Of a DNA stretch of 64,000 nt, positions 1,593 to 61,390 are shown in pieces (position 1 is the first letter of the stretch; each line of letters starts with the position of its first letter). Where the stretch lies: the IMG/VR virus record IMGVR_UViG_3300036944_001324, positions 1 to 64,000 of that record. One strand, written 5' to 3'. Made by a program: the position numbers and the translations under genes. Under the pieces are notes generated by a model. That model was not told where the DNA came from, made no database searches, and saw only the letters and a list, made by a program, of their open reading frames with translations.

Positions 1593-1630
1593 ACGTCATA
1601 AAGCTCCGGGCTCAATACCCGGAGCTCTGA
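1593..1630. terminator. Hairpin of the conserved-flank palindrome family
   Basis: ACGTCATAA-AGCTCCGGG-ctcaata-CCCGGAGCT directly after the nrdA stop. Confidence 0.65.
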
Positions 1631-1652
1631 ACAAAAAGATACCAAGTACATC

Positions 1653-2825
1653 ATGAACCAAATCATCACCCCCGTCAATGCAGCGGCCGCCATCATGGCT
1701 AACATGCAAACGCCGTACGAAACCAGCATTGACAAGAAAATCTTCAACTTCGAGAAGACGGACTACGCAGAACCTTCCTTGTTCTTCGGTCAGGCCAGCG
1801 GCCTCTTCGACACCATCAACCAACACTACCCACAGCTCAAGCGCCTGTACAGCCGCCTCAAGGTTCTGGACTGGGGTGAAACAGAATTCCCCTTCTCGCA
1901 GTGCAATCTGGAGTTCAAACGGATGAAGCCTGAAGTGGCGCGTCCGATGATCGTTCAGCTTGGCTGGCAGTGGGAGACTGACTCCATCGCGGCACGCACC
2001 ATCGCGCCGGTGATGTCCAACTTCCTGACCAACGACACAGCCTTCCGCATGTACCAACGTATTGGGGACAATGAAAGTACCCATGCGGCAACCTACGCCG
2101 AAATCGTGCGGTTCTCTTTTGATAACCCCACTGAAGTGATGGACAGCGTGCTCGGTATCAGCGAAAGCGCTCAGCGCCTGGAAACCGTCTCCAAGGTGTT
2201 TGCTGAAGCCTACAAGGCCGGTCTTGAACTCTCCTTGGGTATTCGCAAGCGTGATCAGGAGACGTTCAACATCTTCTTCATGTTCGTAGTCGCTTTGTTC
2301 ATGATGGAGCGCCTGCAATTCATGATCTCTTTTGGTATCACGTTCACCTACGCGCAGCACAGCCACTTCCTACCCATCGGCAAGGCCGTGCAAAAGATCT
2401 GCCAAGACGAGTATGAAATTCATGCTCTGGCAGGTGCTCACATGTACAACATCCTCATGGACACCGGAGAAGGCATCACTGCTAACTGGGCGTGCCGTGA
2501 TACCATTGTCAAGATGTTCAACGAAATCATGGCGGTGGAGCAAAAATGGCTCCCCTTCCTGCTCGCTGGCAACGAAGACCTCTTTGGCGTTACGCTGCGT
2601 GACTACCAGCAATGGGGTTACTTCTGCGCTGGTGATGTGGCTTCCGTCCTTGGCATCAAGACAGACTTCACAGTTCCAAAGACAGTGCCTATTGACTTCC
2701 TCAAGAACTGGATCAACATCTCGTCGATCCAAGCTTCTTTGCAGGAAGAAAAGAGCGCCGCTTACATGATCGGTGCAGTCATCCGTGACGACATCGGTAA
2801 AGTCTTCGACGTTACGGGCCTCTAA
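1653..2825 (+). CDS. nrdB: Ribonucleotide reductase class Ia beta subunit
   Basis: Di-iron/radical motifs ESTHAATY, MERLQF, DEYEIH; C-terminal Tyr in SAAYM; follows nrdA. Confidence 0.92.
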   Translation: MNQIITPVNAAAAIMANMQTPYETSIDKKIFNFEKTDYAEPSLFFGQASGLFDTINQHYPQLKRLYSRLKVLDWGETEFPFSQCNLEFKRMKPEVARPMIVQLGWQWETDSIAARTIAPVMSNFLTNDTAFRMYQRIGDNESTHAATYAEIVRFSFDNPTEVMDSVLGISESAQRLETVSKVFAEAYKAGLELSLGIRKRDQETFNIFFMFVVALFMMERLQFMISFGITFTYAQHSHFLPIGKAVQKICQDEYEIHALAGAHMYNILMDTGEGITANWACRDTIVKMFNEIMAVEQKWLPFLLAGNEDLFGVTLRDYQQWGYFCAGDVASVLGIKTDFTVPKTVPIDFLKNWINISSIQASLQEEKSAAYMIGAVIRDDIGKVFDVTGL

Positions 2826-2833
2826 GGCTTGTC

Positions 2834-3337
2834 ATGAAGATCGGACTGATCTTTGCCAAAGGCACCAACGAGGCCTTTGGCTACAAGAACGCGCTTCCTT
2901 GGGGACGTAACAAGGAAGACATGAAGCACTTCGCTGACATCACCAAAGGTCACGCAGTGCTCATGGGGCGCAACACTTGGGAGAGTCTGCCAGAGGCTTA
3001 CCGGCCTTTGCCAGACCGCACCAACATCATCATGACCCATAGTCAGATGTTACTGCCTAAGGGCAACTTTCACGTATCTTCTTTTGAAGAAGCTATGGCT
3101 GTCGCTAAGTTCAGTCATCGCGATGAGCTCTGGCTCATCGGTGGTGCCAGCCTGTTGCAGTCACTCCAACACCATGCAAGTATTGCCATTGTCACAGAAA
3201 TCGATACAGCATGTACGTTCGATGTACAGGCTCCGGTTCTGGATAAAAGCTGGCAATTAAAAGACACATGCCCAGCATCATTTGAAGGCATAGGTCAGTT
3301 CGGTACCACGTACCGTTTCCACACCTACTGTCGCTGA
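2834..3337 (+). CDS. folA: Dihydrofolate reductase
   Basis: LPWG..EDMKHF, VLMGRNTWESLP, RPLPDRTNI, IGGA. Confidence 0.95.
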   Translation: MKIGLIFAKGTNEAFGYKNALPWGRNKEDMKHFADITKGHAVLMGRNTWESLPEAYRPLPDRTNIIMTHSQMLLPKGNFHVSSFEEAMAVAKFSHRDELWLIGGASLLQSLQHHASIAIVTEIDTACTFDVQAPVLDKSWQLKDTCPASFEGIGQFGTTYRFHTYCR

Positions 3338-3370
3338 TACTCTGTCCGCTGCGCTTTGCCGCGCTTTTTA

Positions 3371-3413
3371 ACTACCTCGGTGCTTCGGCACTGGGGTAGT
3401 CTTTTTATGCTGT
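3371..3413 (+). terminator. Intrinsic terminator-like hairpin ending TTTTTATGCTGT
   Basis: ACTACCTCGGTGC-TTCG-GCACTGGGGTAGT plus conserved 3' flank. Confidence 0.75.
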
Positions 3414-3417
3414 AAAA

Positions 3418-4266
3418 ATGAACTACCAACCTTTTACACCCAAAACCCATCAAGAGCTCGCTCAATTGCTGGTGGACTCCAATAACCCCGCTGTCTGTAT
3501 CCAGCACTTTTCCAACGAGGGCTACGACCCCGATGAGATACAAAGCCAAATTACCAGCTTGATCAATCAGACGTCGTTGGTTGGTCGAACGCTGCGGGTA
3601 GGGGACGCAGCCATGCCGGTGAACAACCTGTGCCCGCAACCTACCGTGGAAAACGGTGTGTTTAAAACACCGCACGGTGCACGCATTCTTTTTGAGATGC
3701 AAGACCCCCACATCGTCCTGTACGATAACTTCATCACTCCGCTGGAATGCGATCAACTCATTGCGTTGTGCGCTGAACGCTTCAATCGTTCTTTGGTGGT
3801 CGGTGGTCCTGGTGAGACAGTGGCTGATACCCGGTCCTCACAGACAGCTCACCTTGCCATCGGGCAAGATCCGTACGTCAAGGCTTTGGAAGCCCGTATT
3901 GCCGAAACAGTTCACTGGCCTACTCTCAAAGCAGAGTCCTTGCAAATTATCAAGTATGAGCCAGGCCAGGAATACCAACCACACTACGACTTCTTCGAAT
4001 ACACCGAAGCAAGTCCTTATCTGGTCTCGCCTGGCTTTCAGCGAACAGCGACCATGATCTTGTACCTCCAGGAGCCTGAGGCAGGAGGAGCAACCAGTTT
4101 CCCTCGTCTTCGTCTGAAGGTACCTGCTCGCCGCGGACAGGCACTGTTCTTCAGTTACCCCACCCCAAATATCAACCACCAAACCCTGCACGGTGGTGAC
4201 CCAGTTATCGAAGGTGTGAAGATCATCGCAACAAAATGGTTCAAGACACTCCAGCACGGATGTTGA
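3418..4266 (+). CDS. 2OG-Fe(II) oxygenase, prolyl-4-hydroxylase-like (P4Hc)
   Basis: ECDQLI, RSS, LQIIKY.PGQEY.PHYDFF (HxD), QRTATMILYL, GGATSFP, TLHGG.PV.EG.KIIATKW. Confidence 0.9.
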   Translation: MNYQPFTPKTHQELAQLLVDSNNPAVCIQHFSNEGYDPDEIQSQITSLINQTSLVGRTLRVGDAAMPVNNLCPQPTVENGVFKTPHGARILFEMQDPHIVLYDNFITPLECDQLIALCAERFNRSLVVGGPGETVADTRSSQTAHLAIGQDPYVKALEARIAETVHWPTLKAESLQIIKYEPGQEYQPHYDFFEYTEASPYLVSPGFQRTATMILYLQEPEAGGATSFPRLRLKVPARRGQALFFSYPTPNINHQTLHGGDPVIEGVKIIATKWFKTLQHGC

Positions 4267-4328
4267 AATCTTTATGACGTCCTATATGGACAGCCTAATT
4301 TTCAACTTTCTTATGTGAGAGTCTCTCT

Positions 4329-5960
4329 ATGAAACAATCTGTGCTCTCGTCTCTGGGTCTGACTCATGTAGTCACCGAGAGCGAACAAGTCTTGGCTGCG
4401 CCCGTCAGCCAGATCCCCACTCCTATCGAAGTGACACCTGAGATCATCGAAGAAGTCGCTAAGGTGGCTCACGAAGCCAACCGCGGCATCAGTGAAGGCA
4501 CGCCTTTGTCGTGGGATGACAGTACCGACGAGATTCGCCAAAGCGCCATCGATGGCGTGCAAGCGATCGTCAACGATCCGACCATGACGCCTGAGAAGTC
4601 GCACAACAACTGGATGCGCTGGAAGGAGTCGAATGGCTGGGTCTTTGGTGAAGTCAAAGACGAAGAAGCCAAGACCCATCCCTGCATGGTTCCATACAAC
4701 GAACTGCCTGAAGACGAACGCGTCAAAGACCAAGTGTTCGTGGACACCGTCAAATCGGAGCTGATGAAGTACAAAGCTTCCGATGTCAGCGAAAACGACA
4801 TTCCTTCCCCGATCAACGAACAAGCAGTTCCATCGGAGAGCGATATCGATGAAACCACGATGGCGCTGGAAACACTCCTGGCGGCAGCTGACTTGCTGGA
4901 AAATACGCCTGACGAAGGCATGAACTCCACCAATGCCGAACTGGTGGAGACGATGCTTGCTACTGCTGTTGGTCCTCTGCAAGCCAGCTATGCGGTGCCT
5001 TCAGCCGAGTCGTACAAACACGGCAAGGTAGCGTCGCTCAAGAGCTTCGCCAAAGAAGGCATCATGGAACGCGCCACCGCCATCGTTGCCAAGCTGATGG
5101 AAATGGTCAAACGCATCGTTGCGTTCGTTACCGTCTGGGTGAAAGCTGCATTCAACGAACTCGAACGCGCCAAGGCTTATCTGCTGTACGTGCGTCGTCA
5201 GATCCAGAAATACCGCAACACCAACAAAACTGGTCCGGTTCTGACTACTGAGCGGATGCGTGGCATGACAGCTCCTTCCAACCAATCTGTCAAGGTTGGA
5301 TCTGACTTGGCGAGCAACGCCATCACGATGCTCGGTGAGATGTCCACGCGTTTCGTTACGCTGTCTCGTTTCGCTGGCTCCATGTTCAAAGAAACCGCGG
5401 ACAGCGTTACGGGTGAGTTCAAAGGTTCACACCTGATCAACAACATCTACACCGCTTTGGACAGCCTGGGAGGAACCCTTCACCAGTCCGGTACCAAGGC
5501 TTTCATTCTCTCGTCGAGTGGCTTGGGATGGCGTGAAGGAGGGTTGGTTGCGCAAGGTCAATCCGTACCAGTTGACGTTACGGATATCTACTTCCTGTCA
5601 GGTCAGATCGCGGGTTACCAAGCGCAGACCGAAATCACTGGCCTGTCGTTCTCCGACGCTGACCGTTTCCTGTCACAGTTCGGTCAGATCGTGTCCGTGA
5701 TTGAAACCCACCTGCGAACCATCTCGCAGTATGCTGCTTCTCTGTCCAAGGTCCAGACCATCTTGGAATCCGTGCAGCGCGCCGGTAGCTCGGAGCAACA
5801 TGGCGCCGCTCGCAACAAAGCCAAGTTGCGTGAAATCCGCATGACACTCAAGATGGGTCGCGCTTTGGCCAAAGCTGCGATGCACGTCAAGAGTACGACG
5901 ACTGACGCCATGATTGGCGCGGTTTCTCTGGTCAATCAGTCATCCAAGAACTGGTCGTAA
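4329..5960 (+). CDS. phiKZ-type internal head protein with N-terminal RyR-like domain
   Basis: HNNWMRWK..NGWVFGEVKD...KTHPCMVPYNELP..ERVKD; LLENT and SAE site followed by the WV..F amphipathic helix seen in the other head paralogs. Confidence 0.7.
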   Translation: MKQSVLSSLGLTHVVTESEQVLAAPVSQIPTPIEVTPEIIEEVAKVAHEANRGISEGTPLSWDDSTDEIRQSAIDGVQAIVNDPTMTPEKSHNNWMRWKESNGWVFGEVKDEEAKTHPCMVPYNELPEDERVKDQVFVDTVKSELMKYKASDVSENDIPSPINEQAVPSESDIDETTMALETLLAAADLLENTPDEGMNSTNAELVETMLATAVGPLQASYAVPSAESYKHGKVASLKSFAKEGIMERATAIVAKLMEMVKRIVAFVTVWVKAAFNELERAKAYLLYVRRQIQKYRNTNKTGPVLTTERMRGMTAPSNQSVKVGSDLASNAITMLGEMSTRFVTLSRFAGSMFKETADSVTGEFKGSHLINNIYTALDSLGGTLHQSGTKAFILSSSGLGWREGGLVAQGQSVPVDVTDIYFLSGQIAGYQAQTEITGLSFSDADRFLSQFGQIVSVIETHLRTISQYAASLSKVQTILESVQRAGSSEQHGAARNKAKLREIRMTLKMGRALAKAAMHVKSTTTDAMIGAVSLVNQSSKNWS

Positions 5961-5966: not shown

Positions 5967-6010
5967 GAACCAATCCCGTTCTCACGAGCGGGGTTCCTCT
6001 TTTTCTTTTT
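5967..6010 (+). terminator. Intrinsic terminator
   Basis: CCCGTTC-TCAC-GAGCGGG stem followed by a T-rich tract. Confidence 0.55.
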
Positions 6011-7345: not shown

Positions 7346-7390
7346 GACGGCATAAGAAGGAAGCTTACGGGCTTCCTTCTTTTATGCTGC
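7346..7390. terminator. Conserved-flank palindrome
   Basis: GACGGCATAAGAAGGAAGC-ttacgg-GCTTCCTTCTTTTATGCTGC. Confidence 0.8.
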
Positions 7391-7466
7391 CTAGACAGTT
7401 TTTATTCATACCAAATCAATGGTGTGTTAACTATTTCTACCCATTCGAATACCGAAGGATTTTCTC

Positions 7467-9906: not shown

Positions 9907-9910
9907 GGCA

Positions 9911-9986
9911 ACATAACCCCCTACCCCGCAGCACCGAGGCCTTGTAGAGGCTTTAATGGTGTTGAAGGGTAGGGGGTTTATGCCGT
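9911..9986. terminator. Long bidirectional palindrome between convergent genes
   Basis: CATAACCCCCTACCC ... GGGTAGGGGGTTTATGCCGT with extra internal stems. Confidence 0.75.
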
Positions 9987-14956: not shown

Positions 14957-15499
14957 ATGTTTGACCACTTGGTTTCACAACTCACCAAAGGCACTCCAAA
15001 AACATCCGAGGTCTGGTTGGAGTCTGCTCCTAACAAAAAATCTGCGACGGTAAGGAGCGTTGCAATCAAGATGCGTAACGTAGAGTCTGGAGAGATATTT
15101 CTTTTCCAGTCATTGGCAGCAGCCGGCCGATACTTTCGCATATCTGACCTGCGCATGATCAAGGGATTGGTTGATAACCCAGAACGGATGTGGCGCGGTC
15201 ATCAAGCTAAACCCTTGAAAGACAAGACTGATTGGGTGTCTCCTATCCAAAATAACGAATCCGTTTCCAAGGTCGTTAAAGGTGTCAATCACACTTACTA
15301 CCTCATCACTTGGAAGGATACCGGTGAGGAACAAGTTTGCATCGGATACGAGCAGGCTGCCTCCATTACTGGTGTAACCAGATCGTATCTCTCCAAGCTG
15401 GTGTGTTATGGTGACAAACCTAACAAACTCAACTTCAGTATCAGGAAAGCTTCGCAAGAAGATGTCCTCAGATACGAAAGCGGTCCAGTTACCGACTAA
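14957..15499 (+). CDS. NUMOD1/HTH-like repeat DNA-binding protein
   Basis: Two repeats of I..r...tGE...f.s...A; paralog of 15604..16176. Confidence 0.55.
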   Translation: MFDHLVSQLTKGTPKTSEVWLESAPNKKSATVRSVAIKMRNVESGEIFLFQSLAAAGRYFRISDLRMIKGLVDNPERMWRGHQAKPLKDKTDWVSPIQNNESVSKVVKGVNHTYYLITWKDTGEEQVCIGYEQAASITGVTRSYLSKLVCYGDKPNKLNFSIRKASQEDVLRYESGPVTD

Positions 15500-15501: not shown

Positions 15502-15540
15502 AAAAAGAGAAAGTCTCATCAGCTTTCTCTTTTATGCCGT
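15502..15540 (+). terminator. Hairpin with conserved 3' flank
   Basis: AAAAAGAGAAAG-tctcatcag-CTTTCTCTTTTATGCCGT. Confidence 0.75.
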
Positions 15541-15603: not shown

Positions 15604-16176
15604 ATGTTCGACATCCTTGCTCAACAATTGGTAGCCGGCCGTCCGTTCACTTCGTACATCTACAGCGAAGACTCCGATTACAAACCTGTCGCTCCTTCCA
15701 ACATCAAAAAGAACATACCGATCCAGATCCGTGATATGGAAACAGGGGTGGTGACCAATCACGACACTATCGTTTCGGCACTGGACGTCTATCCTGATCT
15801 TTACATCAAGGCACTTCACTCATTGCTGCGAGATCGCCGCAATACCTGGAAGAACCTGCAGGCCAGACCAGCTTCAGATACCAGTCACTGGCATGACCAT
15901 AAGGAAAAATACTTAGGCAAGTCTGCTAAACGTGCAAGACCGTACGTGATTTACGCGCAGCACAAGGGGACAGGAGAAGTCAAGCTCGGTCTGCGTCCCG
16001 AGATTGCCAGGCTCATGAAACTGAGCACGACAACTATTTTCCAGTTGTGCACAGAGCGTTCCCCAGGAAAAGACACTTACGTCTGGAGTGTTCGTTACGC
16101 AACGCAAGAGGATCTTGCCAAAGACACTACCTTCCGCTACATCCCGACGTGCATGAGTTTCTACGAACCGAGTTGA
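15604..16176 (+). CDS. NUMOD1/HTH-like repeat protein paralog
   Basis: IQIRDMETGV and AQHKGTGEV repeats; C-terminal SVRYATQEDL versus SIRKASQEDV in the paralog. Confidence 0.55.
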   Translation: MFDILAQQLVAGRPFTSYIYSEDSDYKPVAPSNIKKNIPIQIRDMETGVVTNHDTIVSALDVYPDLYIKALHSLLRDRRNTWKNLQARPASDTSHWHDHKEKYLGKSAKRARPYVIYAQHKGTGEVKLGLRPEIARLMKLSTTTIFQLCTERSPGKDTYVWSVRYATQEDLAKDTTFRYIPTCMSFYEPS

Positions 16177-16230
16177 CGACATAAAAGACCTACCCGGACC
16201 ATCTAAGGCTCGGGTAGGTCTTTATGCCGT
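16175..16230. terminator. Conserved-flank palindrome between convergent genes
   Basis: GACGACATAAAAGACCTACCCG-loop-CGGGTAGGTCTTTATGCCGT. Confidence 0.8.
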
Positions 16231-19002: not shown

Positions 19003-19038
19003 AACATAAAAAGTCGCTAGGGCGACCATCTATGTTGT
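19003..19038. promoter_or_regulatory. Conserved-flank palindrome between divergent genes
   Basis: AACATAAAAAGTCGC-TAGG-GCGAC-CATC-TATGTTGT. Confidence 0.5.
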
Positions 19039-19096: not shown

Positions 19097-22000
19097 GTGA
19101 GCATCAATCACCATAAGCTCTATTTGAACAATGTCTTTGCCTTGGCAGGGACTTTGGTCGTTAAATCAAAGTATTCAGCCGAGCGCATTAATAATCGACT
19201 GATCGCTTTGTACGGAGCGTCGGCGGTTGATAGCAATCAACCGGCTACCTGGAAATACTATTTGAACATCTGCGGGAACTACCATCCCACAGACCCACAG
19301 ATCACAATTCGATCTTTGGACACTTTGCAGTACATTGCGTTCACCAAGACCAACTTGATGACCCACACTGCTACGGCCCGTGCTTATCAGTACGGAAGCC
19401 GGTACTATCGTGAGTTGCTCGCACAGTATCCTGACCACGAAAACCTCATCCTTGGGATTCTCTATCCGGCAACTATGAGTCAGGTGCTCGATGCACCTGA
19501 TTTTTCTGTAGTGGCCTATCCCAGTCATTTGGTAGAGTCCAATGAGGAAAGCCTCATTCGGAACATCAACACGTGGCTTGAAAAGTTCTACCACCGATGG
19601 AACGTCAGTGCGTTTCACCTGACTGATGAGCTCTACGGTGCCTCTCTCTTAGGCGTCATGTACAGCCAGCTGGTCCCGCTGATTCTCAGTCTGCGTCAGC
19701 GCGCTTGCAAAACGCCAGAAGTGCACAGCTACCATGTTCGGCAATACCTTGCCTCCCACGGAATGCTGGATGTCTACCTGTCGCAGATGACCCAAAAGCA
19801 AGCACTGTTCTTTTACCGGAACATCAGCTACATCGAACGCCACAGTGGCAAGGTCTCCACCTTCGAATGGCTGACTGAGAAAGTGCTTACAGACCGCGGT
19901 CTGCCGCTCGTAGAATACGAGATGCGGCATGAGACGACCGACATGCCTGAAGAGCTCACACCCAAAGTGGTGTTCTCGACCAACCCACTCAACCGTATCG
20001 GCTCTAAGAGCACGACCGGTATTTCCACGGCAGCCATCATGGCCAAGGAAATCGCAGTTGCTTCTGGGAACTTCGAACGTATCGCTATTTCCTCTGGACC
20101 GACCGAGCGTAATCTTAAATACTCTCTGCAAGGCAAGGTAAAGACCAAGGTTCTTGAATCCTCACTGGTTCAAAACGCCGACAGCAGCACACAGTCCATT
20201 CAAGAGACCGCCTTGTCTCTGTGGGGTTACATGGCAGCCACCGGCAGGTACGCCATCTACACGCGTGTGAAAAACCCGATCACGGGCGAAGAGCTCACGC
20301 TGTCGATGCTCCAGGCTTACCATTACTTCTTTTACGCGTATTGCATGGTGCATGCCCGGCCACTGCAAACAGTCCCGTTGGTTTACGCACAATTCGTTCC
20401 GCGTATTCCGCCACCCACGCTTTCCGAAGTATTGAACAACGTCGACACTGGTTACGTCTCAGAAGACAAGATCATCGAGCTGATGAGTTTGAACACGACG
20501 CTCTCGTCGTTCGTCAACACCGAGATGTTTAAAGAAGGCTGCCAACAAGTCTTCACCAGTATAAATCAGCAAGCCACGCTGGTCGCGCAAGAAGAGCACT
20601 TCTATTCTCGCGGTCTGATGCACGGCGCTTTTGCCAAGCAGTATTCCGATTACCTGCTGACAACCTCAGAAACAGGCGAGGACATTAAGGCGTACTTCTC
20701 GTCCATAGACATCCCGACAACAGGCTTCTCTGATTTGGAATGGCAGCAGATCTACTTGGATCTGTTCCAGGCATGCACAGGCTTTGATATGCAAGCCGCT
20801 ATCCAAACCTCGGACCTGCAAAAAGCGATGGTTCGCTTGATGACCCAACTGTCATCTTACTCCGTTCAGTTCGTTTCTGAGTTGTCAGGAAGTAGCATCC
20901 GAAGCTTGAACTGGGCAGCCATTCGTCTTGGCGATAACTCTGGAGCTTCTCGAAGCTACTTTGAAATCATCACCAACATGCTTGAAGTCTTCAAGCTCAC
21001 AAGTGATGTTCACATGTACGTTCCGGTGCCAGTGCTACCGACGTCCAACGGCTTTTCTTTCAAGTCACCTAACTACTACCTCGGGATGCTAGAGATCCCA
21101 GTGAATGTTAGCTCTGATTCCAACAATAACAATGCCCGCCACGAGGTCATTATCCACGTTGCTGGTGTTGATCTGGACGATCGTTTCGACGCCAACGCAT
21201 CGACAGAAATCCCAAGCTGGGAAGCTTTCCAGACCATGACGGATGCGGAGATCGCGCAGATCCCGGACATCTACACGTGGGAATGCCGTCAACCACCTAT
21301 CGTGCCGACCAAGATCAACATCAACGATGTTGTTCACAATAGCGCATTGTCCAGCTTTACGAAGCTGACCAAACCTTCAGTAATCTTGCCTTCGTGGAAA
21401 GCTTACTGGGGTCCCAAGAACATGCGTTACTTCTCAGACGAAAACTCAGTGATCGTTCTGGAAGGTATTTGGTATTACGGTGGTCAAAACCAAATCGAAT
21501 CGTTCATGCCGACCATCGGTCGCAGTCTGGTAGAAAGTTTCACGTATGCCGGTGGAACTGACATCAATGTGACGATAGGGTACTACGACTACACTGGTGG
21601 ACCACTGAGGACCATCAACTTCGCACCGGGTTCTACCCCTGGTGATATGGACATCGGTGTTATCGGGCAGCTGCCGCAGGCCATTGAACTTGAATTGACT
21701 AACGGAGTTAACATCTTCGAGTCGATTACGTTCAACAACACCAAGGTCGATTACGCAGACATTGTGATGGTACCGTTCCACAACACGTACCAGTTCCAGT
21801 TCACCTACAAGAGTGACGACCACGACGTCGGAACGCTCAGCAACTTCACCAACGTGCCGGTCCTTGCTTTCTACGAGATGGCACCTCGTCTGGTGCTCGC
21901 GCCGTTCCTGTCGCAGTACCAGTCAGTTGATTTGACGTTCTTCACCGGTGACGTTAACGTCTACCATTTGCTGCCTCTCTATCAGCACTTCATTGCGGAT

Positions 22001-22204
22001 GGCCCATCACTTCAAGGTTGGGGCGCTGTCGATTTGGACGTGACCCAAGTTGATCCAGTACCTGCTAACCAACCACCTGTTGATGAAGGTGTGGTCTTCA
22101 CTACGTCGGGACCAGCTGCTATTGATGGCTTCGTCTTTGCATCGCCTGGCCCTGCCGTGATTGATCTGGACTTTGAAGCAACGATGGCTACTTTGCCACC
22201 GTAA
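19097..22204 (+). CDS. Large virion structural protein (baseplate/tail candidate)
   Basis: 1035 aa; WKYYLNICG.YH, HSYH..QYLASHG, ALF.YRNI.YI..H.GK..TF..L-type jumbo-phage motifs; beta-rich C-terminal extension. Confidence 0.65.
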   Translation: MSINHHKLYLNNVFALAGTLVVKSKYSAERINNRLIALYGASAVDSNQPATWKYYLNICGNYHPTDPQITIRSLDTLQYIAFTKTNLMTHTATARAYQYGSRYYRELLAQYPDHENLILGILYPATMSQVLDAPDFSVVAYPSHLVESNEESLIRNINTWLEKFYHRWNVSAFHLTDELYGASLLGVMYSQLVPLILSLRQRACKTPEVHSYHVRQYLASHGMLDVYLSQMTQKQALFFYRNISYIERHSGKVSTFEWLTEKVLTDRGLPLVEYEMRHETTDMPEELTPKVVFSTNPLNRIGSKSTTGISTAAIMAKEIAVASGNFERIAISSGPTERNLKYSLQGKVKTKVLESSLVQNADSSTQSIQETALSLWGYMAATGRYAIYTRVKNPITGEELTLSMLQAYHYFFYAYCMVHARPLQTVPLVYAQFVPRIPPPTLSEVLNNVDTGYVSEDKIIELMSLNTTLSSFVNTEMFKEGCQQVFTSINQQATLVAQEEHFYSRGLMHGAFAKQYSDYLLTTSETGEDIKAYFSSIDIPTTGFSDLEWQQIYLDLFQACTGFDMQAAIQTSDLQKAMVRLMTQLSSYSVQFVSELSGSSIRSLNWAAIRLGDNSGASRSYFEIITNMLEVFKLTSDVHMYVPVPVLPTSNGFSFKSPNYYLGMLEIPVNVSSDSNNNNARHEVIIHVAGVDLDDRFDANASTEIPSWEAFQTMTDAEIAQIPDIYTWECRQPPIVPTKININDVVHNSALSSFTKLTKPSVILPSWKAYWGPKNMRYFSDENSVIVLEGIWYYGGQNQIESFMPTIGRSLVESFTYAGGTDINVTIGYYDYTGGPLRTINFAPGSTPGDMDIGVIGQLPQAIELELTNGVNIFESITFNNTKVDYADIVMVPFHNTYQFQFTYKSDDHDVGTLSNFTNVPVLAFYEMAPRLVLAPFLSQYQSVDLTFFTGDVNVYHLLPLYQHFIADGPSLQGWGAVDLDVTQVDPVPANQPPVDEGVVFTTSGPAAIDGFVFASPGPAVIDLDFEATMATLPP

Positions 22205-22364: not shown

Positions 22365-23210
22365 ATGGAAATTTTTCGTCGAACACTCTACGGTGGTGGG
22401 GCGCAAGTCGCGCAGCTTCTGCAGATCCCTCTGCCAATTTTGGTGAACTCCACACTCAACGAACGCCTGGGCATTCAGCAGGCTGCAACGTTGGGTCCTA
22501 CCGAACGTCCGGCGTTGCGTTACTTCACGCTCGGCATCGGTGGTCACGGCGCAACCACCGGTGTTGGGAATCTCCCACTCATCCAGTCGCTGCAGCACTC
22601 GTCCAGTCACTCGGGCCACTATCGCCAACTCCCGTTCGTGATGCGTACCGTTGGCAACGACATCACGGCCATCGAACGCGAGCGTTACGCCCTGCGCCGT
22701 ATCGAGACGATTGGCGGCGTTGACTACATCGTCTACTACGCTCGCCGTATCGACACCTCTGGTGCGCAGATCAAGTTCCAACGCCGCACAGTCGTGGGTT
22801 CAGTCACGACCGTTGAAGACTTCGTTCCAAGCGCTGCCGATCTGAACCCAGATCCACCAGACCTCAGCAACGGCGGTGTCAACACCACCGACGGCGTCTT
22901 CCTGATTGCCAGTTGCAAACTGGAAATCGTTCTGGACAGTTTCGACATCACTGAAATCCTGAACGCCGCCATCATCCTGTACAACTCCGAAGACTACGCC
23001 TTCGTCTCGGAAATCGGCCTGGTGACTGGCGTTGACCGTATGGTCCCGACCAATGACGGTGCAGGCGGCAGCTTCTCGTTCAACGAAGCGGTGTGCGCTC
23101 AGATCTTCACCCATGTGAACGCAATGCAGCCTCTCAAGAGTCAGCGTGACGGTCTCACCCTGACCTATGACGTAGGCACCAACGAGCCTTTGTTCGCTCT
23201 TCAGCCGTAA
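22365..23210 (+). CDS. Virion structural protein
   Basis: YF.LGIGGH, LPFV.R...DI...ER..YALR, YYARRI, EIGLV.G.D; strong codon bias. Confidence 0.65.
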   Translation: MEIFRRTLYGGGAQVAQLLQIPLPILVNSTLNERLGIQQAATLGPTERPALRYFTLGIGGHGATTGVGNLPLIQSLQHSSSHSGHYRQLPFVMRTVGNDITAIERERYALRRIETIGGVDYIVYYARRIDTSGAQIKFQRRTVVGSVTTVEDFVPSAADLNPDPPDLSNGGVNTTDGVFLIASCKLEIVLDSFDITEILNAAIILYNSEDYAFVSEIGLVTGVDRMVPTNDGAGGSFSFNEAVCAQIFTHVNAMQPLKSQRDGLTLTYDVGTNEPLFALQP

Positions 23211-23211: not shown

Positions 23212-23361
23212 CATCGGGATTAGGTACTTTTTATAAGAGTACCCTACATCCGATGGTGACTCGCGTCAAGGGTCTCGATCCCTCGCCACCAACAGTTACC
23301 TACCGTCCTTGACATCCCACAAGTGGAATCTTGGTGCGGTAGGTGACTGCCTTTATGCCGT
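23212..23361 (+). other. Multi-hairpin intergenic structure ending in CTTTATGCCGT
   Basis: Stems 23212-23255, 23254-23288 and CAGTTACCTACCG/CGGTAGGTGACTG (23293-23349). Confidence 0.5.
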
Positions 23362-24641: not shown

Positions 24642-24983
24642 ATGAAGTCTATCTACCGAACCTTCCTTCTGTTGGTGATGATGGTTGTGACTGCTGCCCT
24701 CGTCGGCTGCGGGACACGCGAGCGTATTGTCACCGCCAAAGAAACCACCACCACGGTGCTCAGTGCACCGAAGAAGTACACCACCAACACGGTGGTTCCG
24801 TCCCCACCGTTCACAAAGCTCCAGTACGACTCCGGAACGTGGCCGCAGCGAGCCCAGTACAACGCCGATCTGAACGTCTTGTTGTATGGAGCCATCGGCC
24901 AGTGCAACGCCGACAAGGCCTCCTTGCGTGACTGGGAGATCAAAGAAAAAGCCAATATCGAGAAAGCGAATAAGGCAAAGTAA
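24642..24983 (+). CDS. Probable outer-membrane lipoprotein spanin (o-spanin)
   Basis: Signal peptide with lipobox LVGC, Pro-rich segment, LLYGAIGQCNADKASLRDW. Confidence 0.72.
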   Translation: MKSIYRTFLLLVMMVVTAALVGCGTRERIVTAKETTTTVLSAPKKYTTNTVVPSPPFTKLQYDSGTWPQRAQYNADLNVLLYGAIGQCNADKASLRDWEIKEKANIEKANKAK

Positions 24984-25567: not shown

Positions 25568-25644
25568 CGATTAAGACACAGATCCCAATCCTGTGTCTTG
25601 AACCATTGTCGCTTGTGTTGAAATCACGTTAACGTGAACATCAC

Positions 25645-25679
25645 AGAAGCCTCTCGAAAGGGAGGCTTCTTTATGTCGT
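25645..25679 (+). terminator. Hairpin with conserved 3' flank
   Basis: AGAAGCCTCTC-GAAA-GGGAGGCTTCT-TTATGTCGT. Confidence 0.75.
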
Positions 25680-25714
25680 CTGGTTCTTTGTTTATCTTTC
25701 TCATTTCTCACCCC

Positions 25715-26387: not shown

Positions 26388-26431
26388 GACAGCATAAGAG
26401 GCTCCCTTGCGGGAGCCTCTTTTTATGCCGT
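26388..26431. terminator. Conserved-flank palindrome between convergent genes
   Basis: GACAGCATAAGAGGCTCCC-TTGC-GGGAGCCTCTTTTTATGCCGT. Confidence 0.82.
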
Positions 26432-27419: not shown

Positions 27420-27462
27420 GACGGCATAAAAGCCTCCCGTTTCCAGGAGGCTTTTTTATACC
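27420..27462. terminator. Conserved-flank palindrome
   Basis: GACGGCATAAAAGCCTCC-loop-GGAGGCTTTTTTATA. Confidence 0.78.
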
Positions 27463-32146: not shown

Positions 32147-32198
32147 GACTGCATAAGAGCAAAGCTGCGTCACAAGTACGCGCTTTGCTCTTGACAGT
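32147..32198. promoter_or_regulatory. Conserved-flank palindrome between divergent genes
   Basis: GACTGCATAAGAGCAAAGC-loop-GCTTTGCTCTT. Confidence 0.5.
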
Positions 32199-38099: not shown

Positions 38100-38217
38100 T
38101 TGTTTCTTTGTGAATTATGTGCGTAGCAGTTAACACCGCGTGAGAACCATGGTATGGATTTCCTCACCTTTAGTTATACCGACAACTTCTTTCTTTTCTT
38201 CCTAGGAAAAACCTGAC

Positions 38218-39380: not shown

Positions 39381-39463
39381 GCATAAAGCACTGCAAGGGT
39401 GGTAACCCTTGTGAGTTCCTGCAACGGGAGGAGAGGCTGCAAGGCCTCTCCTTTTATGCCGTC
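39381..39463 (+). terminator. Composite two-hairpin conserved-flank element
   Basis: GCATAAAG...CAAGGGT-GGTA-ACCCTTG...GGAGAGGC-TGCAAG-GCCTCTCC-TTTTATGCCGTC. Confidence 0.7.
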
Positions 39464-39534
39464 AAACACTCTATCATGTGCTGGGTCCCTTTGTTGAGTG
39501 ACTTGTTCTTTTTACCTCTTAAGGAGTTTTACGC

Positions 39535-40592: not shown

Positions 40593-40632
40593 CGTCATAG
40601 AGCCAGGGTTACAACCCTGGCTCTTATGCTGT
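40593..40632 (+). terminator. Conserved-flank palindrome
   Basis: CGTCATAGAGCCAGGGT-TACA-ACCCTGGCTCTTATGCTGT. Confidence 0.78.
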
Positions 40633-40719
40633 CTTCCTAATTACGTCGAACGATTTTGCGTTCTTGAAATCGTGTGTAACGATCGCTAAAGCTATCGACT
40701 AAGAAAGAGATTTTCCATT

Positions 40720-49295: not shown

Positions 49296-49871
49296 ATGGG
49301 TTCATTGTTGGATATCTTGCAGTTCTTTCACTTGTTGGGTACCGAACCCAACATACCTGTCTCGGTATTTATACCGATGATCGCAGTGATAGGCTGCTTG
49401 GCTGGGTTGTGCTTTTACTTCTTCGTGAGGTACCACAACGCCAAAGTAGAGAATAACTACGTTCGTCATACCAAACACCAACATACGGAAGCAGGGTCTT
49501 TGCTCAAGACCTATTGCTTGAATGGCGACCTGTTTGGGATGTATGCTGATGGCAAAGGCGATTCGTACGAACTGATCATTCAGAACCAATGCGCCGGTTG
49601 TGCTTTTCCATCCCAGACAGACAGCTCGCTTTATATGGCGAGAGATGTTTCAACAAAACAGCCTTCCGCTACCACACACCCACTAAGACGTGCTAAGGAC
49701 GCACCAGCTCGCAGAAGTGCAACTAGTGATGAGGATAACTCGTTACAAATGCAAAGCAGTTTGACACTCCATCAATCCATGGCGTTAGCTTCCCAGGTCT
49801 CGCAAGACACATGCACATCCTCAACCGACAGTTCAGGCTCAGATGCGTCCTGTAGTTGTGCCGGTGACTAA
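49296..49871 (+). CDS. Membrane-anchored Cys-containing protein with Ser-rich tail
   Basis: TM helix, YCLNG.L...DG.G, CAGC, C-terminal DTCTSSTDSSGSDASCSC. Confidence 0.55.
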   Translation: MGSLLDILQFFHLLGTEPNIPVSVFIPMIAVIGCLAGLCFYFFVRYHNAKVENNYVRHTKHQHTEAGSLLKTYCLNGDLFGMYADGKGDSYELIIQNQCAGCAFPSQTDSSLYMARDVSTKQPSATTHPLRRAKDAPARRSATSDEDNSLQMQSSLTLHQSMALASQVSQDTCTSSTDSSGSDASCSCAGD

Positions 49872-49880: not shown

Positions 49881-49900
49881 AAAAAATCTCAGCGATATAT
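49881..49900 (+). promoter_or_regulatory. Putative early promoter (copy 1)
   Basis: AAAAAATCTCAGCGATATAT, identical to 53219..53238 and followed by a stem-loop. Confidence 0.65.
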
Positions 49901-49971: not shown

Positions 49972-50271
49972 ATGAGCGAAATCAAAACATACAACGACAT
50001 TGCCTTTGACATTTTGCGCCTGCGCAAGCAGATGCAAGATGAGTTGCAAAGTCGTTGCCGTGTGGTGATGAACAAGCTAGATATGGCCGTGGATGCCGGT
50101 CAGGTGAAACCTTCTCGTGAGGTGGCGCTGTGTAAGAGCATTTGGGATGAGTTCAACGCCATCCCTGTCACGATTCGCAATACCTGCGATCCTGACATTT
50201 CTTCTGAGTTGACCACGCTGATCGAAACAGCTGGTTATATCCCTAACTTCAAGGTTTGGGAAATGCGTTAA
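49972..50271 (+). CDS. Small early hypothetical protein
   Basis: GGAGAATCC leader; followed by a palindrome. Confidence 0.65.
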   Translation: MSEIKTYNDIAFDILRLRKQMQDELQSRCRVVMNKLDMAVDAGQVKPSREVALCKSIWDEFNAIPVTIRNTCDPDISSELTTLIETAGYIPNFKVWEMR

Positions 50272-50317
50272 CGGCATACAAGCAAGGAAGGTGAAAACCT
50301 TCCTTGCTTTATGTCCT
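50271..50317 (+). terminator. Conserved-flank palindrome
   Basis: ACGGCATACAAGCAAGGAAGGT-GAAA-ACCTTCCTTGCTTTATGTCC. Confidence 0.8.
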
Positions 50318-53218: not shown

Positions 53219-53238
53219 AAAAAATCTCAGCGATATAT
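53219..53238 (+). promoter_or_regulatory. Putative early promoter (copy 2)
   Basis: AAAAAATCTCAGCGATATAT plus stem-loop GAAGGAAG/CTTCCTTC. Confidence 0.65.
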
Positions 53239-53313
53239 ACCAGTTGTGAGATTGAAGGAAGTATCATCTTCCTTCTCTCACTTTAACCAACCCATCTACG
53301 GAGTATCCGAACC

Positions 53314-54547: not shown

Positions 54548-54610
54548 GACAGCATATACCTCCAAGCGTGCAAGCTGCCTTCGGGTGGCTTGCACGCTTT
54601 GTATGTTGCT
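54548..54610 (+). terminator. Conserved-flank palindrome
   Basis: GACAGCATA...AAGCGTGCAAGCTGCC-TTCG-GGTGGCTTGCACGCTT-TGTATGTTGCT. Confidence 0.78.
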
Positions 54611-54749: not shown

Positions 54750-55553
54750 ATGACTCAGTACATCATTGTCGAGGGCCCTGACTGCGTAGGCAAAGGTTAT
54801 TTCATCGATCAGTTCAAACAGTTCATGAAACGGCCTTTGAATACCCCGTTCGATGAAACAGATCTGGAAACACGTGATCCTGATTTGTTCGAAACCCTCA
54901 AAGAAGCCCGTTGGGTCGCTGAATCCGGCCAGACGACCGGTGTCTTTCAGACGATGGAAGAAGCAACGCGCTTCATCAAGGATACGACTACGTTTATCCC
55001 CGTAACACAACCACTCAGCATGGCTGTGGCGGAGATCCCCAACGCCACCCCTGAGAACAAAGAGTTCTCACGCAAGATCCACGCAGGCGAGATGACCCAG
55101 GACCAGATCGCAGAAGAATACCTGCAGGTGATCTACGATCATTTCAACTATGCCAAGTTGTTGGGCCAAACGCACGACATCGTTCTGATGGATCGCTCAC
55201 TGCCGTCCTACTACGCCTACCAGATCGCAACTATGGGTTACGCCGACAAGCTTCCTTACTGGGAACAGCTGCATGAAATGATGACCGGTGAAGTTAACTT
55301 CATCGTCATCCATCTGGACGCTCCGGTGGAAGTCCTTGCTGAGCGCAAAGCCAAAAAGAAAGGCGTCTCTGTTCTGGACGAGATCTTCTTTGAACGCATC
55401 GACAAGATCCGCGCCGGCTATGCTGAGTGCTACGCCCGCAAGTACTTCCCGCACCAAATCAAAGTGGACGCCACTGTCACAGGCGAGCATCCCTACGATC
55501 CCCTCTTTCGCAGTCTCATGCTCAATCTCATCAACGCAACCGCACCCAAGTAA
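54750..55553 (+). CDS. tmk: Thymidylate (dTMP) kinase-like
   Basis: IIVEGPDCVGKG P-loop, VLMDRS..SYYAYQ, IHLDAP, KVDA. Confidence 0.85.
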   Translation: MTQYIIVEGPDCVGKGYFIDQFKQFMKRPLNTPFDETDLETRDPDLFETLKEARWVAESGQTTGVFQTMEEATRFIKDTTTFIPVTQPLSMAVAEIPNATPENKEFSRKIHAGEMTQDQIAEEYLQVIYDHFNYAKLLGQTHDIVLMDRSLPSYYAYQIATMGYADKLPYWEQLHEMMTGEVNFIVIHLDAPVEVLAERKAKKKGVSVLDEIFFERIDKIRAGYAECYARKYFPHQIKVDATVTGEHPYDPLFRSLMLNLINATAPK

Positions 55554-56734: not shown

Positions 56735-56765
56735 AAAAGCCAGGGCTTGACGGTCCTGGCTTTTT
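56735..56765 (+). terminator. Intrinsic terminator (no conserved flank)
   Basis: AAAAGCCAGGGC-TTGACG-GTCCTGGCTTTTT. Confidence 0.75.
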
Positions 56766-57148: not shown

Positions 57149-57168
57149 AAAAAGTTGGCGATATATAG
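57149..57168 (+). promoter_or_regulatory. Putative early promoter (variant)
   Basis: AAAAAGTTGGCGATATATAG, then GGAGAT and TTTAACCAAT leader. Confidence 0.55.
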
Positions 57169-58598: not shown

Positions 58599-58653
58599 GA
58601 CAGCATAAAGCCCTCTGTAGCCCCGATAAAGGGCTACAGAGGGTATTTTATGG
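58599..58653 (+). terminator. Conserved-flank palindrome
   Basis: GACAGCATAAAGCCCTCTGTAGCCC-loop-GGGCTACAGAGGG-TATTTTATGG. Confidence 0.8.
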
Positions 58654-58739
58654 GCATTTCTTTTTCGGGTAGTCTCTGAACACGAATGACCACGCTCTCA
58701 AGCTGTCTCTTTCTTTCTTTTTCACTTTAGGAATTCATC

Positions 58740-60045: not shown

Positions 60046-60090
60046 CCGGCATATTGCCTGGGCTTTTATAGCCCAGGCCTTTATGCCGTC
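60046..60090 (+). terminator. Conserved-flank palindrome
   Basis: CCGGCATATTGCCTGGGC-ttttata-GCCCAGGCCTTTATGCCGTC. Confidence 0.78.
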
Positions 60091-60110: not shown

Positions 60111-60140
60111 TTTTTTGGTCATATATAGTAGTTGGGAGAT
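60111..60140 (+). promoter_or_regulatory. Putative early promoter (variant)
   Basis: TTTTTTGGTCATATATAGTAGTTGGGAGAT, then stem-loop AGAAGA/TCTTCT. Confidence 0.5.
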
Positions 60141-60197
60141 AAAGAGAAGAATGCTCTTCTAAACTCTCAATTCAACCAACCTTTAAGGAGTATCCAC

Positions 60198-60545
60198 ATG
60201 TTCGCATCTTTCAACTTTTCTGAATTCGCCGCCATCTTCGCTGTCTACGCAGTGGCGGTTGTGATCTCGCAAATCTTCCTGCCACAACTCGTCGTCTTGA
60301 TGTCCAAGGCCAGCGTTCGCAACCTCAACTTCGGTGCCGTTCTTTCGCTCACCAGCCTTGGTGCCTGGATCGCCAGCATCGTGATCTTTGGTTGGGAAGC
60401 CGTTGCTGTCTTCATCATCGGCTCCATTACCGAAGTTATCATTGGTTACGTTCGCCGCAAGACCATCGTCGCTGCCGCGATTAAGGGTTTCGCAGACGCG
60501 ACAGCGCCCCTGAACTTCAACGATATCGACAGCAAAGCGCTGTAA
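60198..60545 (+). CDS. Multi-TM membrane protein (start revised to MFASFN)
   Basis: TTTAAGGAGTATCCAC leader; about three hydrophobic helices. Confidence 0.65.
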   Translation: MFASFNFSEFAAIFAVYAVAVVISQIFLPQLVVLMSKASVRNLNFGAVLSLTSLGAWIASIVIFGWEAVAVFIIGSITEVIIGYVRRKTIVAAAIKGFADATAPLNFNDIDSKAL

Positions 60546-60554
60546 GGGACTGAC

Positions 60555-60806
60555 ATGCCTTCTTCCACCGCAGCTGATCTCGAAGCAATTCGGGACGTAA
60601 CGGTAAGTTACATGAACAAGGTAATCAGTGACATCACTGATTACCGTGCAGGTGCTGAAGGCAACAAAGCCCTCAGCCCTGCACTCAAGAACGAGGTCAC
60701 GAGCCTCTGCGCTCAGCGCGTAGAAGCCAACTTGACCAACATCAACAAGAACATCGAGCGCTTCAAGTCGGGTGCGCTCGGAGTTTTTGATCAGCCCTCT
60801 AGCTAA
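60555..60806 (+). CDS. Small helical hypothetical protein
   Basis: AAGGGA RBS; phage-like codon usage. Confidence 0.6.
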   Translation: MPSSTAADLEAIRDVTVSYMNKVISDITDYRAGAEGNKALSPALKNEVTSLCAQRVEANLTNINKNIERFKSGALGVFDQPSS

Positions 60807-60922
60807 TGGAGGCTGATATGGCAGTTACCCGACGTCCCCGCAGCGTGGGCAGCCTGCAAGATCTGCAGCAACTGTTCTCGCCCCTTGATCCCCAAGAAAC
60901 CAAACTGAAAGAAACTGAAATC

Positions 60923-61342
60923 ATGAACACCGCACAAAACGCTTCCTCCACCAACAACGTGAACGCTTCTCCTGCTGACATGGCCGAAGCCCTGCAAATG
61001 ATCCAAGCCACGCGCCAAGCGCTGAACGAGCAAGTGGCCCGCGCCGCTGCCACGGCACAAGCCAGCGAAGAACAAGCTGCCGACGCCGTCAAGCGTGTCT
61101 CCGAAATGCGCACCGACTTCGAAAGCGCCACCAGCGACCTCAAGGCCCGCATCAACGTCCTCGAAGCTGCTGCCAAGGCTGCCAATGGCGGCACTGCTCC
61201 TGTCAAGAAGCCCGTGTACAAGCGTGCTCTCGACATCGCTCAGCAAGTCGGCGGCGTTGGCGCCCTGATCGGTGGCGTGGTCTACGGCGGCAAGCTCGCC
61301 TACGACCGCTTCACTGGTGACGGCGACACTGCTCAGGTCTAA
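60923..61342 (+). CDS. Coiled-coil protein with C-terminal Gly-rich hydrophobic helix (start revised to MNTAQN)
   Basis: Ala-rich heptads; VGGVGALIGGVVYGGK; strong codon bias. Confidence 0.6.
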   Translation: MNTAQNASSTNNVNASPADMAEALQMIQATRQALNEQVARAAATAQASEEQAADAVKRVSEMRTDFESATSDLKARINVLEAAAKAANGGTAPVKKPVYKRALDIAQQVGGVGALIGGVVYGGKLAYDRFTGDGDTAQV

Positions 61343-61347
61343 ACACT

Positions 61348-61390
61348 GACGGCATAGCTAGCAGACCCTCACGGGTCTGCTAGCTTGTCC
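61348..61390. terminator. Conserved-flank palindrome between convergent genes
   Basis: GACGGCATAGCTAGCAGACCC-TCAC-GGGTCTGCTAGCT. Confidence 0.78.

What the first reader, a model, noticed from the sequence alone, without database searches (positions are those of the whole stretch)
1593..61390. About 20 intergenic palindromes with unrelated stems but a conserved self-complementary base (GACGGCATAAA ... TTTATGCCGT)
Seen in sequence: copies at 1593, 3371, 7346, 9911, 15502, 16175, 19003, 23293, 25645, 26388, 27420, 32147, 38063, 39381, 40593, 48638, 50271, 54548, 58599, 60046 and 61348. The GC-rich stems share no sequence with each other, yet the flanks converge on 5'-GAC(G/A)GCATA(A) and/or TTTATG(C/T)(C/T)GT-3', which are reverse complements of each other. 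The U-tract expected of an intrinsic terminator is consistently followed by AUG(C/U)(C/U)GU. Other terminators here (5967, 56735) lack the flank, so it is not needed for simple termination. Established: phiKZ late promoters carry a short TATG at the start site, and the phage non-virion RNAP recognises it poorly in fully duplex DNA. Inference: each element could be a combined terminator and promoter, where a hairpin or cruciform presents outward-facing TATG on one or both strands. Alternatively the base could be a recognition site for a phage RNA-processing, RNA-export or DNA-organising protein. I cannot check whether this has been described in relatives.
Basis: partly seen in the sequence, partly recalled or inferred. 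Interest (0 to 1): 0.82.

Follow-up and report, generated by a model that had tools for sequence, protein, structure and literature searches.

The report
Conserved phiKZ-type transcription terminators
The roughly 20 intergenic hairpins with a shared GACGGCATAAA / TTTATGCCGT base are real, but they are the conserved, often two-directional transcription terminators already mapped in phiKZ and 201phi2-1, here in a new uncultivated relative, and published start-site maps do not support them being promoters as well.

Summary
All 21 listed sites exist. TATGYYGT occurs 23 times against 4.9±2.2 expected, and 22 of those lie in or at the edge of intergenic DNA, which is 6.7% of the window. All 22 sit beside very stable hairpins.

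The window is the first 64 kb of IMG/VR contig IMGVR_UViG_3300036944_001324, a new phiKZ-like (Chimalliviridae) jumbo phage. It shares at most about 40% amino-acid identity with isolates.

The flank matches the terminator motif published for phiKZ (hairpin + TTATKYYGT, 61 terminators, Putzeys 2024). A similar motif was reported for 201phi2-1. I also find it in FLC9, LucasX, RP12 and Ea35-70, in degenerate form in EL, OBP, CF8, Aphrodite1 and KpLz-2_45, and not in SPN3US, Goslar, AR9 or RSL1.

Published phiKZ RNA 3' ends fall inside the flank (TAT|G, TATGY|, TATGYY|). None of the 119 published phiKZ start sites I checked uses a terminator's own TATG.

The "self-complementary base" is two independent copies of one strand-specific signal. 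Their register varies and they show no covariation. The elements sit at a fixed distance from the upstream stop codon, not from the next start codon.

Verdict: a new member of a known kind. Why the flank is conserved is still unknown.

The parts
1593..1628 (-). Hairpin with the flank on the - strand only (TATGACGT, 7/8), between two + strand genes
   Evidence: (dG -22.8 on - strand)
3371..3413 (+). Terminator after gene 2834-3337; flank TATGCTGT at 3406-3413; next start codon at 3418
7346..7391 (.). Two-armed element between tandem + genes (- arm TATGCCGT 7347-7354; + arm TATGCTGC 7383-7390)
9908..9986 (.). Two-armed long hairpin between convergent genes (- arm TATGTTGC; + arm TATGCCGT 9979-9986)
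   Evidence: (dG -44.6)
15503..15540 (+). Terminator after gene 14957-15499; flank TATGCCGT at 15533-15540
16175..16230 (.). Two-armed element between convergent genes (TATGTCGT on -, TATGCCGT on +)
   Evidence: (dG -32/-37)
19003..19038 (.). Small hairpin in a divergent intergenic region; + arm TATGTTGT faces gene 19097-22204. This is the only promoter-only orientation
23296..23361 (+). Terminator after gene 22365-23210; flank TATGCCGT at 23354-23361
25645..25679 (+). Terminator after gene 24983-25567; flank TATGTCGT at 25672-25679
26388..26431 (.). Two-armed element between convergent genes (both arms 8/8)
27420..27457 (-). Terminator between tandem - strand genes; flank TATGCCGT on the - strand. 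The flank is conserved in relative L014 while the other side diverged
32147..32191 (-). Hairpin in a divergent region; - strand flank TATGCAGT (7/8), conserved in L013 and L014
38063..38099 (+). Terminator after internal-head-protein gene 36790-38046. In L014 the stem is replaced but the flank is kept
39381..39462 (+). Double hairpin after gene 38218-39369; flank TATGCCGT at 39455-39462
40593..40632 (.). Element after gene 39535-40506; + arm TATGCTGT, - arm TATGACGA (6/8). Compensatory stem changes in L014
48638..48682 (.). Two-armed element between tandem + genes (both arms 8/8)
50271..50317 (.). Two-armed element in the early-gene region (- arm 8/8, + arm TATGTCCT)
54548..54609 (.). Two-armed element in the early-gene region (- arm 8/8, + arm TATGTTGC)
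58599..58655 (.). Hairpin with the - arm at 8/8 and a weak + arm (TTTTATGGGC)
60046..60089 (.). Two-armed element, followed about 30 nt later by an early-promoter-like AT-rich box
61348..61385 (-). Terminator of the - strand DnaB-like gene 61406-63046; flank TATGCCGT on the - strand. The + strand side has a plain T-run instead

Best explanation
These are the phage's factor-independent transcription terminators, of the type experimentally mapped in phiKZ and 201phi2-1. The unit is strand-specific: a stable GC-rich hairpin, then 1-4 T, then ATG-Y-Y-G-T(C). This flank takes the place of the usual U-tract, and the RNA is released inside it. When the unit is present on both strands of one hairpin, the element is a bidirectional terminator and its flanks look like a palindromic base. 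Shown: the anatomy, enrichment, orientation and conservation of the elements. Shown only in relatives: the RNA 3' ends, and termination activity in reporter constructs. Inferred: the conserved A, G and G-T tune pausing or release for the phage's own multisubunit RNA polymerases, and the antisense arms in tandem-gene regions stop antisense transcription.
For: The window is phiKZ-like: phiKZ_IP, divergent DnaB and split DNA polymerase families, with 290 Chimalliviridae-type hits at 40% identity or less. PMC10914365 section 18 reports that 61 intrinsic phiKZ terminators share BCCYCCCCHWWDGGGRRGGBYTTATKYYGT. PMC11512511 reports a 201phi2-1 motif A (n=59) that resembles it; A/B combinations lengthen the stem, and eight terminators tested between two fluorescent reporters in uninfected P. 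chlororaphis were active. For 24 phiKZ hairpin-TATG terminators with published 3' ends, the ends lie at TAT|G (8), TATGY| (6) and TATGYY| (6). The last nucleotide is always a pyrimidine and the next is G in 13 of 24. The hairpin + TATGYY flank is enriched 10- to 50-fold in the window, phiKZ, 201phi2-1, FLC9, LucasX, RP12 and Ea35-70, and absent in the AR9 and RSL1 controls. Window logo from 26 units: TTTATG, then C/T, C/T, G 88%, T 69%. Orientation and the fixed distance to the upstream stop codon fit terminators. In orthologous sites of a 62%-identity relative the flank is kept while stems are replaced or change by compensation.
Against: There are no RNA data for this phage, so termination here is by analogy. 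Two elements (19003, 32147) lie between divergent genes, where no mRNA needs terminating. Eight arms in tandem-gene regions point antisense, and their role is inferred only. The simple hairpin-plus-T-run scan found only a few of these elements, because the T-run is interrupted. The reason for conserving ATGYYGT is not established. The 201phi2-1 terminators worked with host polymerase alone, so a phage-polymerase-specific need is unproven.
Confidence: 0.8

Rival explanations
1. Combined terminator and late promoter: the TATG next to the hairpin is an initiation site for the non-virion RNA polymerase on one or both strands, helped by hairpin or cruciform opening.
For: TATG is the phiKZ late-promoter core with the start at G (PMC4666361). 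It is bound as single-stranded non-template DNA (PMC12809450). The window phage's GP123 homologue keeps 10 of 14 pocket residues. Elements 19003 and 32147 sit in divergent regions with arms facing genes. In phiKZ, P049 and P075 start 8-10 nt after terminator hairpins.
Against: 0 of 119 published phiKZ start sites lie at a terminator's own TATG. In the automated count there are 0 promoter-only units, 3 terminator-only and 8 antisense. In the manual count the split is 1 promoter-only against 6 terminator-only. Distances to the next start codon run from -2 to 145 nt and leave no room for a ribosome site at 3406, 48678 and 50313. phiKZ late promoters do not have YYGT after TATG. Separate conserved promoter-like blocks lie downstream.
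Confidence: 0.08
2. The flank is an RNA tag. The mature 3' end (hairpin-UUUAUGY) or the extended stem is bound by a phage protein for 3'-end protection, processing or export from the phage nucleus.
For: The flank is conserved across phages of unrelated hosts and G+C contents of 37-57% while stems drift. Terminated phiKZ RNAs retain UUAU(GYY). In two-armed elements the arms can pair in predicted folds.
Against: No covariation and a variable register between arms. The best-conserved G (88%) and T (69%) at motif positions 7-8 lie at or beyond most mapped 3' ends, so they would be absent from the RNA. No binding protein is known, and literature searches found none.
Confidence: 0.09
3. A DNA-level element: a palindromic binding site for a dimeric DNA-organising protein, a cruciform, or a dispersed mobile repeat.
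For: The flanks are reverse complements and the elements are dispersed. phiKZ-like phages encode SbcCD-like palindrome nucleases (annotation seen).
Against: 13 of 21 elements have only one good arm. Half-site spacing varies with stem length and the register is off by -4 to +6 nt. The stems are unrelated, so these are not copies of one repeat. The elements are tied to stop codons.
Confidence: 0.03

Closest known systems
phiKZ conserved intrinsic terminator motif, 5'-BCCYCCCCHWWDGGGRRGGBYTTATKYYGT-3' (Putzeys et al. 2024, PMC10914365)
   Same: GC-rich hairpin followed by TTAT-K-YY-GT, located after genes. Many carry the reverse-complement arm (ACRRCATAA) upstream and terminate on both strands (T051/T052, T059/T060, T070/T071).
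   Different: In phiKZ the stem itself is conserved (CCYCCCC/GGGRRGG). Here the stems are unrelated, and the flank is sharper and longer (TTTATGCCGTC). No RNA data exist for this phage.
201phi2-1 terminator motifs A and B (PMC11512511)
   Same: Motif A is said to resemble the phiKZ motif, and A/B co-occurrence gives an elongated stem, which matches the two-armed elements here. I see the same flanks in 201phi2-1 DNA.
   Different: Their logos are only in figures I could not read, so the equation of motif B with the upstream arm is my inference.
Canonical bacterial intrinsic and bidirectional terminators (hairpin + U-tract, A-tract upstream)
   Same: Stable hairpin. RNA 3' ends 6-9 nt after the stem in phiKZ. 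An A-rich upstream and T-rich downstream side gives two-way function.
   Different: The U-tract is short and interrupted by conserved A, G and G. Conservation extends beyond the A/T tracts (GAC-R-GC / GY-Y-GTC), which ordinary terminators do not show.
phiKZ late promoter TATG (Yakunina 2015, PMC4666361; structure PMC12809450)
   Same: The identical four bases. The window phage keeps most residues of the TATG-binding pocket.
   Different: Late promoters have no upstream hairpin and no YYGT after the G. Mapped start sites avoid the terminator TATGs.

Membership tests
phiKZ-type conserved terminator (hairpin + TTATKYYGT) | Stable GC-rich stem-loop | tested here: met
   dG -18 to -37 kcal/mol, z -3.9 to -8.6; hairpin lists
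phiKZ-type conserved terminator (hairpin + TTATKYYGT) | 3' flank TTAT-K-YY-GT directly after the stem | tested here: met
   26 hairpin+TATG units; logo TTTATG-Y-Y-G(88%)-T(69%); 23 exact TATGYYGT against 4.9 expected
phiKZ-type conserved terminator (hairpin + TTATKYYGT) | Placed just downstream of a co-directional gene | tested here: met
   15 of 23 units, and the remaining 8 are second arms of such hairpins; the motif G is 37-53 nt after the stop codon in 10 of 14
phiKZ-type conserved terminator (hairpin + TTATKYYGT) | RNA 3' ends map inside the flank | not testable with these tools
   No transcriptome for this phage. In phiKZ, 20 of 24 published ends lie at -1 to +2 relative to the G
phiKZ-type conserved terminator (hairpin + TTATKYYGT) | Conserved stem sequence CCYCCCC...GGGRRGG | tested here: not met
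   Stems are unrelated. This appears specific to phiKZ, since the other relatives also vary
phiKZ late promoter | TATG with transcription starting at the G | not testable with these tools
   TATG is present, but the start site cannot be tested here. In phiKZ, 0 of 119 published start sites are at terminator TATGs
phiKZ late promoter | Upstream of a co-directional gene with room for a leader | tested here: inconclusive
   12 of 23 units are compatible, none is promoter-only, and distances run from -2 to 145 nt
Canonical intrinsic terminator | At least 5 T in the 8 nt after the stem | tested here: inconclusive
Total calls were not above shuffles (23 against 19.9±5.3), because the T-run is interrupted by ATG
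Structured RNA family or dispersed repeat (Rfam, REP/MITE-like) | Shared sequence or structure model | tested here: not met
   No Rfam family at gathering score; stems share no sequence
Conserved base-paired stem extension | Covariation and a fixed register between the two arms | tested here: not met
   Register -4 to +6, 11 of 47 symmetric; 89 Watson-Crick pairs against 95.7±5.5 permuted

The most novel reading that the evidence does not exclude
The terminator flank and the late promoter share TATG because one protein site reads both. [quoted passage not shown] During elongation it could capture the same bases in the same register just after a hairpin, pausing the enzyme before the G and so promoting release. 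The published phiKZ 3' ends at TAT|G (8 of 24) and the pyrimidine|G steps fit this register. The window phage keeps 10 of 14 pocket residues at 27% overall identity. The YYGT that follows would then mark 'stop here' rather than 'start here'.
Probability: 0.12. Interest if true: 0.7.

Novelty: new member of a known kind. Interest (0 to 1): 0.3.

Why it matters
As a finding it is mostly ordinary. It gives a clean terminator map for an uncultivated jumbo phage. It also shows that the phiKZ terminator flank is kept across distant genera (hosts Pseudomonas, Burkholderia, Ralstonia, Xanthomonas, Erwinia; 37-57% G+C) while the stems are free to change. The flank is absent from the regions sampled in SPN3US and Goslar.

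That pattern points to the flank, not the stem, as the conserved and unexplained part. Why a multisubunit phage polymerase should prefer UUAUGYYGU to a plain U-tract is open. So is whether this is linked to the TATG start signal. Both can be tested with enzymes and structures that already exist.

Practically, the motif is a good annotation aid for gene ends and strand switches in Chimalliviridae contigs. It also warns against calling every TATG a late promoter.

Tried and rejected
- **DNA similarity:** megablast of a 3.1 kb gene against phage records found nothing. The phage is too distant for DNA-level comparison with isolates.
- **Close relatives:** The search for related loci with one protein returned only the source contig itself. 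Closer relatives came from the protein search and contig look-up instead.
- **RNA families:** Rfam at gathering score and tRNA scans found nothing.
- **Supplementary tables:** none were held for the journal versions of the two transcriptome papers. I used the bioRxiv supplement and re-derived positions on the phiKZ sequence. I read only P008-P126 of the start sites. For 3' ends I read T001-T076 but analysed only those in the first 150 kb (up to T065).
- **Base-paired conserved stem:** tested and rejected.
- **Motif ATG as a start codon:** rejected in general, because most copies open reading frames of only 3-14 codons (read). The one possible exception is 25673.
- **GP123 pocket conservation against flank presence, 13 phages:** inconclusive. 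SPN3US is divergent and lacks the flank, but Goslar has an ordinary pocket and also lacks it. Goslar's sample held only 11 hairpins.
- **Automated hairpin and arm table:** it extended stems into the arms and misplaced some arms, so the parts list rests.


Full report
**What the window is.** It has 51.9% G+C and encodes phiKZ-type internal head proteins, a divergent DnaB-like helicase, a split DNA polymerase and ribonucleotide reductase.
- A 994-aa virion protein hits 290 phage records, all below 60% identity. The best is Burkholderia phage FLC9 at 40%. Megablast finds nothing.
- The window is the first 64 kb of IMG/VR contig IMGVR_UViG_3300036944_001324, which is 271,654 bp.
- My own codon-usage gene map gives 67 genes, mostly on the + strand, with four - strand blocks. 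Intergenic DNA is 6.7% of the window.

**The observation.** All 21 sites carry a stable stem-loop and at least one flank matching TATGYYGT or its complement.
- Exact TATGYYGT occurs 23 times against 4.9±2.2 in shuffles. Twenty-two are intergenic or at gene edges, all beside hairpins.
- Folding energies are -18 to -37 kcal/mol, with z-scores of -3.9 to -8.6.
- A logo from 26 hairpin+TATG units reads TTTATG, then C/T, C/T, G (88%), T (69%), C/T.
- The enrichment is far beyond chance and the stems share no sequence.

**It is already described in relatives.**
- Putzeys et al. 2024 (PMC10914365, section 18) mapped phiKZ RNA ends by ONT-cappable-seq. They report that 61 predicted intrinsic terminators share 5'-BCCYCCCCHWWDGGGRRGGBYTTATKYYGT-3'.
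- The 201phi2-1 study (PMC11512511) reports a similar motif A (n=59). It also reports A/B combinations that lengthen the stem, and eight terminators that work between reporter genes in uninfected P. chlororaphis.
- The published phiKZ terminator sequences show the same upstream arm (ACRRCATAA) and paired 3' ends on both strands at single hairpins, for example T051/T052 and T059/T060.
- Two literature searches found no other treatment of the motif.

**Distribution.** I sampled 43-150 kb per phage.
- Hairpins flanked by TATGYY are 10- to 50-fold over background in the window, phiKZ, 201phi2-1, FLC9, LucasX, RP12 and Ea35-70.
- They are absent in SPN3US, AR9 and RSL1.
- EL, OBP, Aeromonas CF8, Aphrodite1 and KpLz-2_45 show a degenerate hairpin-TTAT(G/A)T with CATAA upstream. 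Goslar shows only TTATA.

**Where RNA ends and starts in phiKZ.** I placed published coordinates on the phiKZ sequence.
- For 24 hairpin-TATG terminators, the 3' ends lie at TAT|G (8), TATGY| (6) and TATGYY| (6). The last base is always a pyrimidine and the next base is G in 13. The flank is therefore the release zone, and the final G-T mostly lies just downstream of the RNA end.
- Of 119 published start sites (P008-P126), none is at a terminator's own TATG. P049 and P075 start at a second TATG 8-10 nt further on. Early promoters typically follow terminators by about 35 nt.
- Late promoters there do not carry YYGT after TATG.

**Orientation in the window.**
- Manual count, 22 intergenic exact motifs: 16 follow a co-directional gene and 11 precede one. 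Six can only be terminators because they face the end of a convergent gene, and one can only be a promoter (19031). Five are antisense second arms.
- Automated count, 23 hairpin+TATG units: 15 terminator-compatible, 12 promoter-compatible, 3 terminator-only, 0 promoter-only and 8 neither. All 8 are second arms of a terminator-compatible hairpin.
- The motif G lies 37-53 nt after the upstream stop codon in 10 of 14 cases, but -2 to 145 nt from the next start codon.
- All four convergent junctions carry an element with the correct arms.

**The 'self-complementary base'.** I examined 47 two-armed elements from seven phages.
- The arms are offset by -4 to +6 nt, and only 11 are symmetric.
- The five outer positions form 89 Watson-Crick pairs against 95.7±5.5 when arms are shuffled within each phage.
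- The arms are therefore independent copies of one strand-specific signal, each positioned relative to the hairpin.

**Evolution.** Two relatives were recovered: L013 (91% identity in the neighbouring protein) and L014 (62%, NCBI JANPYG010105989.1).
- At the site orthologous to 38063 the stem is entirely different, but CTTTTATGCYGT is kept.
- At 40593 the stem shows compensatory changes.
- At 27420 only the co-directional flank is kept.
- Separate fully conserved blocks lie 20-40 nt downstream: 38113-38126, 39469-39487, 40666-40685 and 32203-32218. These are better promoter candidates.

**Mechanism.**
- Best supported: these are intrinsic terminators, often bidirectional, in which UUAUGYYGU replaces the U-tract.
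- Inferred: the conserved A, G and G-T tune pausing or release for the phage polymerases, and antisense arms stop antisense transcripts.
- A speculative link: the non-template TATG pocket of GP123 (PMC12809450) would see the same bases in the same register when the RNA ends at TAT|G.
- The window phage's homologue (L023:6559-8223) keeps 10 of 14 pocket residues at 27% overall identity. Across 13 phages, however, pocket conservation does not cleanly track the flank.

**Verdict.** The feature is real and strongly non-random, but it is a new member of a published kind. The promoter reading is not supported. The open question is why this flank is conserved.

Noticed in passing
window 49881-49900, 53219-53239, 57149-57168, 60117-60128: AT-rich boxes (AAAAAATCTCAGCGATATAT..., AAAAAGTTGGCGATATATAG, TTTTTTTGGTCATATATAG) upstream of small genes. 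They resemble the phiKZ early (virion polymerase) promoter AAAAAATTTGAGATCTATATTAC, so 49-61 kb looks like an early-gene region.
   Followed up: partly
window 38113-38126, 39469-39487, 40666-40685, 32203-32218: Short blocks 100% conserved with the 62%-identity relative L014, lying 20-40 nt downstream of terminators and sharing a TGTG core (AATTATGTGCGTAG and others). They are candidate middle or late promoters or leader elements.
   Followed up: partly
window 5972-5995, 33399-33428, 36711-36735, 56735-56764: Strong intergenic hairpins without the ATGYYGT flank. Some have plain T-runs and some have none, so the phage uses at least two terminator or hairpin styles.
   Followed up: no
window 25673-25675: The ATG inside the flank TATGTCGT is in frame with ORF 25634-26380 and lies 7 nt after GGGAGG in the hairpin's 3' arm. 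It may be that gene's real start codon.
   Followed up: no
window 4272-4280: TTATGACGT right after the stop of gene 3418-4266, with no hairpin upstream. This is the one intergenic near-motif without a stem.
   Followed up: no
window 4329-5960: A 543-aa protein that combines a RyR domain (PF02026) with a phiKZ internal-head-protein domain (PF12699).
   Followed up: no
L023:6559-8223 (source contig about 67.8-69.4 kb, outside the window): Homologue of the phiKZ non-virion polymerase subunit GP123. It keeps 10 of 14 residues that contact the TATG promoter bases, more than any other non-Pseudomonas relative sampled.
   Followed up: partly
L008 (SPN3US 50-100 kb), L017 (Goslar): These two Chimalliviridae lack the G-YYGT flank. 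SPN3US terminators have ordinary long T-runs, and its GP123 homologue differs at 9 of 14 pocket positions.
   Followed up: partly
window 49296-49871 and 54750-55553: Two likely genes that my codon-usage gene map missed. The map is heuristic, and several start codons next to hairpins (23309, 25634) are probably mis-set.
   Followed up: no
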